Source: Stylophora pistillata
Lineage: Eukaryota
Length of the DNA: 64,000 nt
Reading direction: 5' to 3'
Assembly (NCBI RefSeq): GCF_002571385.2
Contig: NW_019217977.1
Coordinates: forward strand, 46,829 to 110,828
In this document: in pieces, positions 13,684-33,038 of the stretch
How positions within the stretch are numbered: the stretch's first letter is position 1
Layout: every line of letters begins with the position of its first letter
Program-made: the position numbers and the translations under genes
The notes under the pieces: generated by a model
Told to the model about the DNA's origin: nothing
What the model saw: only the letters and a program-made list of their open reading frames with translations
Databases searched by the model: none

Positions 13684-14926
13684 TTAAGCACGAGTCAGTC
13701 TTTCGTAGTGACTCGCGCCTGTTTCATAAGTGAAAACTGTAGTTGAGCCGTTCTTTGGTTGGTATTGGTCTATTCCTGTTGGGGTAAGATGTCCACTCTC
13801 TTTGTCTTTAATCAACCAGTATCTTTTGTGGGCGGGATCCTGAACCGTCAAAAAATGAAAAAAGAAAATGTTAGTTATTGGAGAATTTTTGTCCGGTGAC
13901 TTCTTCACAATGGTATCTTAATTCAAAATTTGCGACAAGAAATATGAGATAGAGCATATCATGAAGAGGCATTTCTGTTGGCATGGAAACCTCGCATACA
14001 AGAGGAGAAACTTAAAGTTCATGATTTACGAAACAGTGTTTAAAGTATACGTGAAGCGCGGCTTTTTCTCACATTCGAACGTAAAATGTGATTAAAACAC
14101 CTCTCTCTCCCCTCCCACTCCCCCTTTGATACATTCTTCCAAGGAATGAACACAAAGAAAAACTGAATTATGATAATACAATACCTCTTGAATCCCATCC
14201 ATGGCGATGACAAAATCCCCCAGACCACCATAGTAGGTGGTGGAATATTTATTGAACGACCCTTGTGGATCTTCGTCAGCAGCTTTCTTCATTATGTCAA
14301 CAAGAATCGTACCTTGAGGCACCTGGGTGGTGTAGGGAGCAGGGATTGGTTTGTCCACAATGGTAACATCCCAGTCCTGTGCGATTGTAACAGTGATCAT
14401 GTCCATCTCGTTCTAAGTAGATGCAAAATATCACGTTTGCTATTTTGGTGGTATAAAATCGTGATGCTGTCAGGGAGGGTTTAACCTCGTTCCCAGGGTT
14501 TCTCTGACTCGTCTTCCGTAGCAAAGAGCCTTGGAAACGAGATTGATGGAGATTGGAAGAAAGTCCCGTCGCAACCTTCGCCGAAATGAGCCATTGTGAT
14601 AAAGTACATATGTTAAAACTTTATCATCTTACTCAACGCCATCAAAACATACAGGTAAAGAAAAATTCAACTGGATCGTATACAGACTCGAGCTATTTGA
14701 TCGTGAATTTCACGCTACAGATTATTTATTACGATCGGATGGCAACAAAGACATTGCAATTGGTACCGATTATATCCAGTCCGGCAGCCGCGATCCTGAG
14801 CTGGGTTACTCTCCAAACAGAAAGATAAAACGTTGATGCCCCTTTTCGTATGGGGAAGAATTATGAAATTGACACTTCATATATTATGTCAGTAAACTTT
14901 ACTATATGCTTCGCCATGTTAGGCAT
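13684..14926 (-). CDS. Gene A: single transcobalamin beta-domain (DUF4430-like) protein with no hydrophobic tail; first exon tentative
   Basis: Exons 14185-14412 (228 nt, the same length and phase as the domain-2 exon of genes B and C) and 13684-13839. Motifs YYGGLGDFVIAMDG, RYW and GIDQYQP-NGSTTVF. Candidate first exon 14903-14926 (MPNMAKHI, phase 0, donor GTAAAG). Confidence 0.7.
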
Positions 14927-14956
14927 GACAAGAAGGAAATTCAGTCTTGTTACGAA

Positions 14957-31300: not shown

Positions 31301-33038
31301 TAAGCGGCGAATCTTCAAAACGAAAAAGGTTACATAGTTCATTGGAAAGGTGTTAACTGCAGGATCATTTTAAAGTATGGAAGCCTTCCATAAGTTTCGC
31401 TGAATCAGCTTACCTCAGATGCAGCTTCCCTTCTTTCCCGTAAATGGGCTGCAATAACAAAAATGCATTTCATCGTTTTCTATTATATTCCTTTTTTTAA
31501 TCAAATTTCATTTTGACAACAAAGACACTGAAAAACTAAAAATTCATTTTACACGTCTGATATCACCATCTTTTAGTTCATGTCCTTTATCGAGTACTAT
31601 TTGTTTACAGACATGATTGTGTAACTTTTTTTTTTAACGCTTAAAAGCAGCGTCAAATACACTACACATCGGGTGCCGGGTCGCTGAGGAATTCGAGTGC
31701 GAATGTGTGAGAATTGTTTCGAAGACAAAATTCAGTCCACAGGAGCGAGGATATTCACGAAAATTATTCATTCTTACAACATGCCAAAAGAGGCAAGGCG
31801 TCATGTAGTGCGCGCGTAGTCTCCCTCGCAGCTGTTTTTTGGATGTCACGCAACGCTAAAAGGCTGCGAGGGAGACTAGTGCGCGCGTGACCTGGATAGA
31901 ATTATTTTCCGGTGCAGTGCAGCTGACATTAGTTACGTACCGACATCAGGTTAGCCCGATCTTATGAGCCTAGCATCTTGTAGGCTCTGATAGCGCGACT
32001 TAATTTGACCTCTGTACATATTTCGTCGCGGAAACTGTTCATATGAAAGGTTTCGGCCCGAAATCCAAGGAGGATGACCTTTGAGTTGTCATCCCGACAA
32101 CCGTGTGAAGTGTCTTCAAAAAATTCCGCCCTGTTCCGAACTGAGATCTCGCTTACAAACCGAGAACTTTATATCACCAGGTTGAGCCACCTTCTAAAAT
32201 AAACACACTAAATTTCTTCCAAACGGTAAGATCTCGAATACCGAGCCCGAAGCGTTACCTTGGGCCTTTTGTTTAATAGGCCCTCGGTTTCCGGCAAAAT
32301 AACTTTAAAAGTGATGCAACAGATAAATAATGAACTCTTAGAGAGAAGAAATTCGATTTGTTTAGTGACGATTCACTGAAGGGCTAGTAGCCAGCAGACG
32401 ACCGCACGCTCCTGTCAAAATAAATACGAAAGAGAGTTTTCAGTAACGCTCAGCGTGTAACTTGGCTAAACTTCAGAATACCCGGCCACTCATTTACATG
32501 TCATTGAATAAGAAGCATCTATTGTGTTATGCTTCATTCTTCAAAGCCTCCCGACACATGTAAATGTGTGGACGGGTATTCTGAAGTTGCTCCTGTAACT
32601 TTTAAAAAGCAAACAGGTATTTGGTGCTCGACGAGCATGTAAATTTCAGTGAAAACCCAAGCACGTGTTCGCGTTACCATCGAACCGAAACACGCGCGAA
32701 CGACTATGTGCAAAATTTGATCGGAAAAAATTCGTTAAAGAAAGAGGAAAGTACGTAAGGCATAGGAATAGAAAAATCGGAAAAGGGGAGAATAAATGAA
32801 AAACTTTGGTGTAGCTGAATAAGCGTTCGTCGTACACGCAAAGTGAACATGTGAAATATTACATAACTTGTGTATTCATCTCACCAGTAATTCAAGCTGG
32901 AGTCGAGTCAAACACGGTTAAACTATAACAACTTCTTTCACGCAAGCATAATAGCTCGAAAGCTCATTTACCTTGACTGGTGCTGGAAACTGCACAGAAT
33001 AAAAACAAACTAAAGGAGGCAATGATTGACGTCTTCAT
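28328..33038 (-). CDS. Gene C: signal peptide, two transcobalamin beta (DUF4430-like) domains and a GPI-like tail; 5 exons, fully phase-consistent
   Basis: Exons 32972-33038 (MKTSIIASFSLFLFCAVSSTSQ), 31414-31448, 30411-30809, 29206-29433 and 28328-28537, ending EPSSGCNFMGTSLVVLCLLAIVEAL*. Motif YYGGLGYLITTING...SYW...CGGDSYVPYNGSTILF. Confidence 0.88.
31817..31878. mobile_element. 62-bp mini-MITE with 16-bp TIRs and a 9-bp TSD
   Basis: TAGTCTCCCTCGCAGC...GCTGCGAGGGAGACTA, flanked by GTGCGCGCG at 31808-31816 and 31879-31887. Confidence 0.85.

What the first reader, a model, noticed from the sequence alone, without database searches (positions are those of the whole stretch)
13684..33038. Tandem cluster of beta-domain-only cobalamin-binding-fold genes: a candidate vitamin B12 capture system
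Seen: three minus-strand paralogues made only of a module of about 100 aa with the pattern ITVT...V-x-x-GT-x-L-x-DI(M/I)-x-KA...Y-x-x-TYYGG-x-G-x-FI-x-x-(I/M)NG...YW...G-x-D-x-Y-x-P-x-x-GST-x-x-F. Genes B and C have a signal peptide, two modules and an S-S-G plus hydrophobic C-terminus typical of GPI signals. Established: this pattern matches the C-terminal beta domain of transcobalamin, haptocorrin and intrinsic factor (DUF4430-like), and those vertebrate carriers are soluble alpha+beta proteins taken up by separate receptors. Inference: here the alpha domain is absent and a tandem beta-beta unit is tethered to the cell surface, so the protein could be both binder and receptor. In a cnidarian holobiont, where B12 must come from prokaryotes, it could scavenge corrinoids for the host or its algal symbionts.
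Basis: partly seen in the sequence, partly recalled or inferred. Interest (0 to 1): 0.85.

Follow-up and report, generated by a model that had tools for sequence, protein, structure and literature searches.

The report
Coral cluster of transcobalamin-beta-only genes
Three neighbouring, expressed genes of the coral Stylophora pistillata encode proteins built only from the 'beta' half of the animal vitamin-B12 carriers. Two of them look tethered to the cell surface. They probably bind B12-like molecules, but this has not been tested, and the databases list them only as uncharacterised proteins.

Summary
The window is the Stylophora pistillata reference genome. The three minus-strand genes are RefSeq LOC111332454 (A, 125 aa), LOC111332411 (B, 316 aa) and LOC111332426 (C, 312 aa). 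Their exons reproduce those proteins exactly, and spliced RNA-seq contigs support all three. Both assembly gaps lie in introns and transcripts splice across them.

All three products score above Pfam's DUF4430 cut-off. A profile of the modules hits only the beta domains of intrinsic factor, haptocorrin and transcobalamin in the PDB. An AlphaFold model superposes on the haptocorrin beta domain (Z 12.1, 1.5 Å over 102 residues).

B and C have a signal peptide, two modules, N-glycosylation sites and a conserved hydrophobic C-terminus. Whether that end is a GPI signal or a transmembrane anchor is unresolved. A has no signal peptide and no tail, so it is probably intracellular.

No alpha domain is added, but the coral has a canonical alpha+beta gene on another contig. 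Beta-only cobalamin carriers are already known in zebrafish (Tcnba/Tcnbb), and isolated human TC-beta binds cobalamin. Corrinoid binding is therefore a reasonable but untested inference. The family also occurs in non-symbiotic corals, molluscs, echinoderms and hemichordates, so it is not specific to symbiosis. I rate it a new variant of a known kind, of moderate interest.

The parts
13684..13839 (-). Gene A (LOC111332454), last coding exon: second half of the single beta module and the stop codon. There is no hydrophobic tail.
   Evidence: Transcript contigs L003-L010 map here. The joined exons equal P0161. DUF4430 half-hit.
12072..13683 (-). Gene A 3'UTR. It is convergent with, and overlaps, the 3' end of a plus-strand ankyrin-repeat gene.
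   Evidence: Contigs L003-L006 run on to about 12072 and then into Ank exons of the opposite strand.
14185..14412 (-). Gene A exon with the start codon (14406) and the first half of the module.
   Evidence: In the transcripts an in-frame stop precedes the ATG.
16138..16293 (-). Gene A non-coding 5' exon, so A is an independent transcription unit. It is 75% identical to gene B's 5'UTR exon.
17859..18083 (-). Gene B (LOC111332411) last coding exon: second half of module 2, an N-S-S-G patch and the hydrophobic C-terminus. The 3'UTR continues to about 17039.
18452..18679 (-). Gene B exon: first half of module 2.
19159..19563 (-). Gene B exon: complete module 1 plus the linker.
   Evidence: Pfam DUF4430 at 33 bits.
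20081..20112 (-). Gene B small exon between the signal peptide and module 1.
20444..20547 (-). Gene B exon with the start codon (20504) and the signal peptide.
22443..22570 (-). Gene B non-coding 5' exon.
   Evidence: Contigs L011-L015.
21197..21596 (.). Assembly gap inside intron 1 of gene B, next to a retrotransposon fragment. It has no effect on coding sequence.
28328..28537 (-). Gene C (LOC111332426) last coding exon: second half of module 2, an S-S-G patch and the hydrophobic C-terminus.
28746..28756 (.). Assembly gap inside intron 4 of gene C.
   Evidence: contig L002 splices from 29205 to 28539.
29206..29433 (-). Gene C exon: first half of module 2.
30411..30809 (-). Gene C exon: complete module 1 plus the linker.
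31414..31448 (-). Gene C small exon carrying a conserved dibasic R-E-R-R motif.
   Evidence: the alignment.
32972..33082 (-). Gene C first exon: 5'UTR, start codon (33038) and signal peptide.
26259..26315 (-). Relic of a signal-peptide exon. It has no ATG, and GC stands where the GT donor would be. It lies beside a reverse-transcriptase fragment.
   Evidence: RVT_1 at 25365-26006.
33104..33187 (-). Relic of the start of a module, with an in-frame stop.

Best explanation
The locus is a three-gene tandem cluster of alpha-less transcobalamin-beta (DUF4430, transcobalamin-like SLBB beta-grasp) proteins.

Shown:
- The gene structures and their expression.
- The absence of any alpha domain.
- Family membership and fold.
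- In B and C: a signal peptide, N-glycosylation sequons, two tandem beta modules and a C-terminal hydrophobic anchor signal.
- In A: a single module with no targeting signal.

Inferred:
- B and C are displayed on the outer face of a membrane, either the plasma membrane or a lumen-facing endomembrane. The anchor is a GPI anchor or a tail-less transmembrane helix.
- Each module holds one corrinoid by its lower, nucleotide-loop face. The isolated human TC beta domain and the zebrafish beta-only carriers Tcnba and Tcnbb bind in this way.
- The tethered protein therefore captures dissolved, food-derived or bacteria-derived cobalamin at the cell surface. It brings the cobalamin in when the membrane is endocytosed, in the manner of the GPI-anchored folate receptor.
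- Gene A would hold corrinoids inside the cell.

The coral's separate canonical alpha+beta carrier presumably handles soluble transport.
For: - Exons equal the RefSeq proteins, and spliced transcripts exist for all three genes.
- Pfam DUF4430 scores are 36.4, 39.4 and 28.3 bits against a cut-off of 23.8.
- The module profile hits only cobalamin-carrier beta domains in the PDB: IF 5.7e-13, HC 1.2e-6, TC 2.6e-6.
- The AF2 model has mean pLDDT 80.9, with the modules above 90.
- Foldseek ranks TC, IF and HC first, and the isolated TC beta domain gives a TM-score of 0.79.
- VIA-align gives Z 12.1 and 1.5 Å over 102 residues to the haptocorrin beta domain. The next fold group, MoaD/SAMP, scores only Z ~6.
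- The beta-hairpin insert that defines the transcobalamin-like clade is present. The positions aligned with HC Trp359 and Tyr362 carry L/M/Q and L/F (PMC1796856, PMC4350170).
- Isolated human TC-beta binds cobalamin and cobinamide (PMC5599065).
[quoted passage not shown] 2018).
- The signal peptide and hydrophobic tail are conserved in all scleractinian orthologues that include the C-terminal exon.
- The Cbl/beta-domain interface is the most favourable of the three interfaces in rat TC (PMC11107200).
Against: - There are no binding data for any invertebrate member.
- In mammalian carriers the alpha domain supplies about half of the buried ligand surface, and separating the domains lowers affinity (PMC5599065, PMC11107200).
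- The stacking positions are aliphatic or Phe here, not Trp or Tyr.
- The tail is unusually well conserved for a cleaved GPI signal: an E-G-L-L motif survives from Acropora to Stylophora. The kind of anchor is therefore open.
- Gene A has no signal peptide, so extracellular capture cannot be the whole story.
- Some orthologues lack the tail (P0015, P0130).
- Localisation and expression pattern are unknown.
Confidence: 0.5

Rival explanations
1. Same fold, different ligand. The modules bind another soluble molecule and have nothing to do with B12. Candidates are haem, a chlorophyll or haem breakdown product, another tetrapyrrole, or a non-tetrapyrrole ligand.
For: The SLBB superfamily binds diverse soluble ligands (PMC1796856). 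A bacterial transcobalamin-like alpha/beta pair has been proposed to scavenge haem (bioRxiv 10.1101/864751). The bacterial DUF4430 structure 3U7Z is annotated only as a putative metal-binding protein, yet it matches at Z 9.8. The aromatic stacking residues of HC and IF are not kept.
Against: Every characterised animal member of the clade binds corrinoids, including the beta-only fish proteins. The modules are closest in sequence and structure to the animal carriers (28% identity and 1.5 Å to HC beta) and to the coral's own canonical carrier.
Confidence: 0.2
2. The proteins bind corrinoids but are not an uptake receptor. They would sequester B12 or inactive analogues at the surface or in mucus, as haptocorrin is thought to do. 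That could withhold the vitamin from microbes or symbionts, or filter out analogues.
For: Haptocorrin is described as a scavenger of corrinoid analogues (PMC4947154, PMC4350170). There are several paralogues and independent tandem expansions in Pocilloporidae and Oculina. TIR-domain genes lie nearby, which is weak evidence.
Against: Nothing distinguishes this from uptake at the sequence level. A membrane tether is not needed for sequestration. Gene A is intracellular.
Confidence: 0.15
3. The beta-grasp modules are used for protein-protein contacts on the cell surface, such as adhesion, matrix or recognition, and bind no small ligand.
For: Beta-grasp domains are common protein-interaction modules, and ubiquitin-like tandem structures appear lower in the fold lists. 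The architecture is a glycosylated tandem-repeat surface protein.
Against: The most conserved stretch of the family is the insert hairpin (T-Y-Y-G-G-x-G) and the Y-W strand. These are the ligand-contact elements named for transcobalamin in PMC1796856. The match to carrier beta domains stands far above the ubiquitin-like folds (Z 12 against 5-6).
Confidence: 0.08

Closest known systems
Zebrafish Tcn-beta-a / Tcn-beta-b (Tcnba, Tcnbb), the beta-domain-only cobalamin carriers of ray-finned fishes (Benoit et al. 2018 J Biol Chem, cited in PMC9730659 and PMC10778862; earlier noted as 'solo C-terminal domains' in PMC1796856 and PMC4350170)
   Same: They are animal proteins with a signal peptide and a DUF4430/transcobalamin beta domain, with no alpha domain. 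They coexist with a canonical alpha+beta carrier in the same genome.
   Different: The fish proteins have one beta domain and are soluble secreted glycoproteins. Coral B and C have two tandem modules and a hydrophobic membrane-anchor signal. Coral A has one module but no signal peptide. Orthology to the fish genes was not tested. Cobalamin binding has been shown for the fish proteins only.
Beta domain of mammalian transcobalamin, intrinsic factor and haptocorrin (PDB 5NP4, 2PMV, 4KKI)
   Same: The fold is the same, including the clade-specific beta-hairpin insert (Z 10.8-12.1, rmsd 1.5-1.9 Å for HC and IF), and the sequences are significantly similar. The isolated TC beta domain binds cobalamin and cobinamide on its own (PMC5599065).
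   Different: The mammalian proteins are fused to an alpha6/alpha6-barrel domain that clamps the other face of the ligand and carries the receptor site (TC-CD320, PMC4947154). The coral proteins have none.
Bacterial and archaeal DUF4430 / transcobalamin-like SLBB surface proteins (PMC1796856; PDB 3U7Z)
   Same: They are stand-alone or repeated beta modules with signal peptides, often tethered to the cell surface. In bacteria the tether is a sortase anchor.
   Different: They are prokaryotic, use different anchors and lie in operons with ECF or ABC transporters. 3U7Z is a more distant match to the model (10% identity, Z 9.8).
GPI-anchored folate receptor alpha, and the surface B12-capture lipoproteins BtuG/BtuH of Bacteroides (PMC10404256, PMC13616437). 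These are functional analogues only.
   Same: They share the concept of a high-affinity vitamin binder tethered by lipid to the cell surface, acting as both binder and first uptake step.
   Different: The folds are unrelated. The comparison with the folate receptor rests on my own knowledge, not on a test made here.

Membership tests
Pfam DUF4430 (PF14478) / transcobalamin-like clade of the SLBB beta-grasp superfamily | Score above the curated gathering threshold of the family HMM | tested here: met
   C scores 36.4, B 39.4 and A 28.3 bits against a cut-off of 23.8. The single exon of B module 1 scores 33 bits.
Pfam DUF4430 (PF14478) / transcobalamin-like clade of the SLBB beta-grasp superfamily | Beta-grasp core with the extra beta-hairpin inserted after the helix (PMC1796856) | tested here: met
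   In the AF2 model, strands 84-90 and 94-100 follow helix 66-76 in module 1, with the same order in module 2. Superposition on HC, IF and TC beta domains gives Z 10.8-12.1.
Pfam DUF4430 (PF14478) / transcobalamin-like clade of the SLBB beta-grasp superfamily | Conserved hydrophobic residue in the insert that stacks on the nucleotide base of cobalamin | tested here: met
   By profile alignment, the position aligned with HC/TC Tyr362 is Leu or Phe in all five modules, and the position aligned with HC/IF Trp359 is Leu, Met or Gln. This rests on alignment only, not on a ligand-bound structure.
Eukaryotic cobalamin carriers TC/IF/HC (Pfam Cobalamin_bind, PF01122) | N-terminal alpha6/alpha6-barrel domain | tested here: not met
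   There is no PF01122 hit in A, B or C. The transcripts have in-frame stops upstream of the ATG in A and B. The only PF01122 locus in the genome is G000:C169:196154-196693.
Eukaryotic cobalamin carriers TC/IF/HC (Pfam Cobalamin_bind, PF01122) | High-affinity corrinoid binding | not testable with these tools
   This needs recombinant protein. Cobalamin is not among the ligands of the complex predictor.
Beta-domain-only cobalamin carriers (fish Tcnb type) | Secreted protein consisting of beta domain(s) only | tested here: met
   Met for B and C, which have a signal peptide and only DUF4430 modules. Not met for A, which has no signal peptide.
Beta-domain-only cobalamin carriers (fish Tcnb type) | Common descent with the fish Tcnb genes, as opposed to independent loss of the alpha domain | not tested
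   No fish sequence was obtained. The tree holds invertebrate rows only.
GPI-anchored proteins | N-terminal signal peptide plus a C-terminal signal: small omega-site residues, a short spacer and a hydrophobic stretch that ends the protein with no basic cytosolic residues | tested here: inconclusive
   A rule-of-thumb check passes: an S-S-G or N-S-[AS]-G patch, mean Kyte-Doolittle 1.9-2.7 over the last 16 residues, and one acidic and no basic residue there. However, no dedicated predictor was available. The 21-residue hydrophobic end with a conserved Glu also fits a transmembrane helix.
GPI-anchored proteins | Release by PI-PLC, or a lipid anchor found on the mature protein | not testable with these tools
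   This is an experiment.

The most novel reading that the evidence does not exclude
B and C are self-contained binder-receptors. A membrane-tethered tandem-beta protein captures cobalamin and carries it into the cell without an alpha domain and without a separate cubam- or CD320-type receptor. The cytosolic one-module paralogue A receives or buffers the cofactor inside. Proteins with the same plan (signal peptide, repeated beta modules, hydrophobic tail) occur in hemichordates and echinoderms, and tail-less repeated-module relatives occur in molluscs. This would therefore be an old and widespread invertebrate route of B12 uptake that has never been described.
Probability: 0.22. Interest if true: 0.75.

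Novelty: new variant of a known kind. Interest (0 to 1): 0.5.

Why it matters
All animals need B12 and none can make it, yet uptake is understood almost only in mammals. How corals and other marine invertebrates acquire the vitamin from sea water, food or their microbes is not known. This locus gives concrete candidates that can be cloned:
- two surface-tethered tandem-beta proteins;
- one intracellular single-beta protein;
- a canonical carrier elsewhere in the same genome.

If the tethered proteins bind cobamides, they would extend the beta-only carrier class from fishes to cnidarians. They would also show a new architecture, with binder and anchor in one chain, and give coral-microbiome work a host-side handle on B12 exchange. 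If they bind something else, they would mark a new ligand class for the transcobalamin beta fold in animals.

Tried and rejected
No depth, strand or junction counts from raw reads are available. Letters of 14999-15037 were sent to no search afterwards, and they were masked in the local BLAST database. Expression and splicing rest instead on Logan transcript contigs.
- The look-up of encoding contigs gave nothing for the RefSeq protein of gene C, because records of the own genome are withheld.
- Earlier findings of the scan gave nothing by place or by words.
- The primary structural papers with the residue-level contact lists were not held (Wuerges 2006 and 2007, Mathews 2007, Furger 2013, Benoit 2018). 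The binding-site check rests on the summaries in PMC1796856 and PMC4350170.
- Literature searches found no paper on these coral genes or on transcobalamin-type proteins in corals.
- I considered that gene A is a pseudogene fragment or an alternative 3' end of gene B, as the old model PFX23851.1 suggests. I rejected this. A has its own 5' exon, is spliced and expressed, is conserved at 125-126 aa in Pocillopora, and forms its own older clade.
- I considered that the gaps break a gene and rejected it.
- My own joined spliced models were sent to no search tool. Exons were searched by reference, and the database proteins returned by the tools were used for the whole-protein searches and the fold.
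- No complex prediction was run, because no protein-protein binding is claimed.
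Full report
**Identity of the window and the genes**

Six-frame ORFs and tblastn with the two single-exon modules found five copies of a ~110-aa module on the minus strand between 13.7 and 30.8 kb, plus two degenerate relics. 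Protein searches returned Stylophora pistillata RefSeq and GenBank proteins that match the window's exons without a single difference:
- XP_022793491.1/PFX23852.1, 312 aa, for gene C;
- XP_022793470.1, 316 aa, for gene B;
- XP_022793529.1, 125 aa, for gene A.

In a script I joined the GT-AG exons and compared the translations with these database proteins, and all three were identical. My own joined models were sent to no search tool. Exons were searched by reference, and the whole-protein searches and the fold used the proteins that the tools had returned. The window is G000:C194:46829-110828 of a 398-Mb, 5513-contig assembly.

**Gene structures and expression**

Public RNA-seq assemblies (Logan contigs of 1-3 kb) carry the spliced forms, and I mapped them back to the window.
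- Gene C has five exons: 33082-32972, 31448-31414, 30809-30411, 29433-29206 and 28537-28178.
- Gene B has six: a non-coding exon 22570-22443, then 20547-20444, 20112-20081, 19563-19159, 18679-18452 and 18083 to about 17039.
- Gene A has three: a non-coding exon at 16138 to at least 16293, then 14412-14185 and 13839 to about 12072.

A's 5' exon is 75% identical to B's 5' exon. A is therefore a diverged duplicate with its own transcription start, not a 3' appendage of B as the old model PFX23851.1 drew it. In the transcripts of A and B an in-frame stop lies upstream of the start codon. Nothing, and in particular no alpha domain, can be added at the N-terminus. Some contigs of B retain the intron before module 1. 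They give the ORF without a signal peptide that RefSeq calls isoform X2, and I could not tell whether that form is real.

**The assembly gaps**

Gap 21197-21596 lies in intron 1 of B, in a stretch with retrotransposon debris. Gap 28746-28756 lies in intron 4 of C. Transcripts splice cleanly across both. I did not fill them or look up their letters.

**What the module is**

- Pfam scores all three proteins above the DUF4430 gathering threshold: 36.4, 39.4 and 28.3 bits against 23.8.
- A single module already has intrinsic factor and transcobalamin as its best PDB sequence matches.
- A profile built from coral and other invertebrate modules (alignment A2) hits, among 177,635 PDB sequences, only cobalamin carriers, always in their beta domain: IF 5.7e-13, haptocorrin 1.2e-6, transcobalamin 2.6e-6 to 4.7e-5. 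After these comes one bacterial DUF4430 protein.
- AlphaFold2 on gene C's protein with 21 homologues gave mean pLDDT 80.9, with both modules above 90.
- Foldseek ranks TC, IF and HC first. The isolated human TC beta domain (5NO0, 5NP4) matches with a target-normalised TM-score of 0.79.
- VIA-align gives Z 12.1 at 1.5 Å over 102 residues and 28% identity to the haptocorrin beta domain, and Z 10.8-12.0 for IF and TC. There is a clear drop to Z ~6 for MoaD, SAMP and Urm1.
- The model has the beta-hairpin after the helix that defines the transcobalamin-like clade of the SLBB superfamily (PMC1796856).
- In the profile alignment, the residues aligned with the bulky residues that contact the nucleotide in HC, IF and TC (Trp359, Tyr362; PMC4350170) are Leu/Met/Gln and Leu/Phe.
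- The family's most conserved stretches, T-Y-Y-G-G-x-G in the hairpin and the Y-W strand, coincide with the elements named as ligand contacts in PMC1796856.

**Architecture**

B and C have the following features:
- an N-terminal hydrophobic signal;
- six N-x-S/T sequons each;
- a Cys pair in module 1;
- two modules;
- a patch of small residues (S-S-G, or N-S-S-G) followed by about 20 hydrophobic residues that end the protein, with no basic residue.

The same plan holds in Pocillopora, Oculina (three paralogues), Desmophyllum and Acropora. However, the tail is unusually well conserved, and an E-G-L-L motif survives from Acropora to Stylophora. It is also long enough for a transmembrane helix with no cytosolic tail. 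No GPI predictor was available, so I leave the kind of anchor open and regard only 'membrane-tethered, extracellular' as likely. Two orthologues from metatranscriptomes lack the tail and may be soluble forms (P0015, P0130). Gene A has neither signal, only one sequon and no cysteine. It keeps G-D where the others have G-Y or G-H in the hairpin, and it is conserved at 125-126 aa in Pocillopora. It is most simply an intracellular protein.

**Genome and evolutionary context**

In the whole assembly the module occurs only in this cluster and at one other place, G000:C169. There a Cobalamin_bind alpha domain (69 bits) is followed on the same strand, 1.3 kb downstream, by a DUF4430 beta domain (36 bits). 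This is a canonical alpha+beta carrier. The beta-only genes therefore exist beside the classical carrier, not instead of it.

I built a maximum-likelihood tree of 43 module sequences. It is midpoint-drawn only. Rows P0106, P0064, P0073, P0083 and P0090 of alignment A1 were left out. It shows the following:
- All scleractinian first modules form one clade (100/99) next to the second modules, so the tandem duplication predates the radiation of stony corals.
- The split between B and C predates the split between Stylophora and Pocillopora.
- The A type is a separate, older lineage.

More distant relatives with one to several modules, several of them with signal peptides and hydrophobic tails, are annotated as uncharacterised proteins in an anemone, gastropods, bivalves, a sea star and acorn worms. 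The family therefore includes azooxanthellate and non-cnidarian animals, which speaks against a function tied to the algal symbiosis. The neighbouring genes are an ankyrin-repeat gene, two TIR-domain genes, a GT8 glycosyltransferase and MRP-S22, together with retroelement debris. None of these has a link to B12.

**Function**

No member outside the vertebrates has been studied. I found no paper on these genes or on transcobalamin-type proteins in corals. Two established facts make corrinoid binding the best guess:
- The isolated human TC beta domain binds cobalamin and cobinamide in the normal pocket. It needed extensive washing to be freed of ligand, although separating the domains lowers affinity (PMC5599065). 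The Cbl/beta interface is the most favourable one in rat TC (PMC11107200).
- Zebrafish have two secreted beta-only proteins, Tcnba and Tcnbb, reported to bind cobalamin about as tightly as full-length Tcn2 (PMC10778862 and PMC9730659, citing Benoit et al. 2018, which I could not read; solo beta domains in fishes were already noted in PMC1796856 and PMC4350170).

What is new here is the form: two modules in tandem, a membrane anchor in the same chain, and an intracellular one-module paralogue. The reading of binder and receptor in one chain is attractive by analogy with the GPI-anchored folate receptor (my own knowledge) and with the bacterial surface B12 lipoproteins (PMC10404256), but it is wholly inferred. 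The alternatives are another ligand such as haem, proposed for a bacterial transcobalamin-like pair (bioRxiv 10.1101/864751), sequestration rather than uptake, or a non-ligand surface role.

**Verdict**

The genes are real and expressed, but they already sit in RefSeq and UniProt as DUF4430 or 'transcobalamin-like C-terminal domain' proteins. The functional story is plausible and testable but untested, and its holobiont part is weakened by the taxonomic spread. I rate it a new variant of a known kind, with interest 0.5.

**Limits**

I worked beside that stretch and sent none of its letters to any search afterwards. There are no raw-read data, no GPI or signal-peptide predictor, no ligand co-folding, and no access to the primary contact lists.

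Noticed in passing
window 31414-31448 (gene C exon 2) and orthologues P0120, P0123-P0129, P0114: Just after the signal peptide nearly all scleractinian two-module proteins carry a conserved L-R-E-[KR]-R motif, which fits the R-x-[KR]-R furin-type cleavage consensus. This suggests that a very short propeptide is removed. Gene B has replaced this exon's sequence and lacks the motif.
   Followed up: partly
window 17859-17930 and 28328-28400; alignment A1, last block: The hydrophobic C-terminal tail is strongly conserved, with a G-x-G-L-V-x-L-C core and an invariant Glu four to six residues (three in C) from the end. This holds even between Acropora and Stylophora. It is unusual for a GPI signal that is cut off, and could mean a functional transmembrane helix with a charged residue.
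   Followed up: partly
window 26259-26315 and 33104-33187, minus strand: These are two relics of former family exons. One is a signal-peptide-like exon without an ATG and with GC in place of the GT donor, next to a reverse-transcriptase fragment (25365-26006). The other is a module start with an in-frame stop just upstream of gene C. The cluster has lost at least one copy.
   Followed up: partly
window 16138-16293 versus 22441-22573: The non-coding 5' exons of genes A and B are paralogous (about 75% identity). A therefore kept the promoter-proximal exon of a two-module ancestor while losing the signal-peptide, linker and module-1 exons.
   Followed up: partly
window 5625-12072, plus strand: An ankyrin-repeat gene (329-aa ORF in contigs L005 and L006) converges on gene A. 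The assembled transcripts of the two genes overlap at their 3' ends near 12072.
   Followed up: no
window 39800-40621 and 42687-43490, minus strand: Two neighbouring ORFs each carry a TIR_2 domain (53 and 56 bits). This is a small tandem of TIR-domain genes 7-10 kb upstream of gene C.
   Followed up: no
window 131-1234 minus strand, and 1882-2319 minus strand: ORFs with ParA/MinD/CbiA-type P-loop ATPase matches (AAA_31, CbiA) lie beside an integrase zinc-binding domain. This is an odd bacterial-looking ATPase next to retroelement debris in a coral contig.
   Followed up: no
G000:C169:196154-198218 (locus L001 5125-7237, plus strand): This is the coral's only canonical transcobalamin-like gene: a Cobalamin_bind alpha domain followed by a DUF4430 beta domain. 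It is 34% identical to B's module 1 across most of the beta module.
   Followed up: partly
database models PFX23851.1 (P0160) and Pocillopora verrucosa XP_066028025.1 (P0166): These gene models fuse the B-type gene to the A-type gene downstream. In one case the model reads A's 5'UTR exon in frame. The transcripts seen here do not support the fusion, so these are probably mis-joins or rare read-through.
   Followed up: partly
window 19565-20081 (intron 3 of gene B); contigs L015-L019: Several RNA contigs retain this intron or start in it. They give an ORF that begins at module 1 without a signal peptide (RefSeq isoform X2). This could be unspliced precursor or a real intracellular isoform.
   Followed up: no
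Nothing was laid, and the stretch was left out of all later searches.
   Followed up: no
(runs X1-X14): Poly(A) RNA-seq runs hold 29-50% of the sampled words of 13600-19600, although exons and UTRs make up less than that. This suggests retained introns, precursor RNA or DNA carry-over in those libraries.
   Followed up: no
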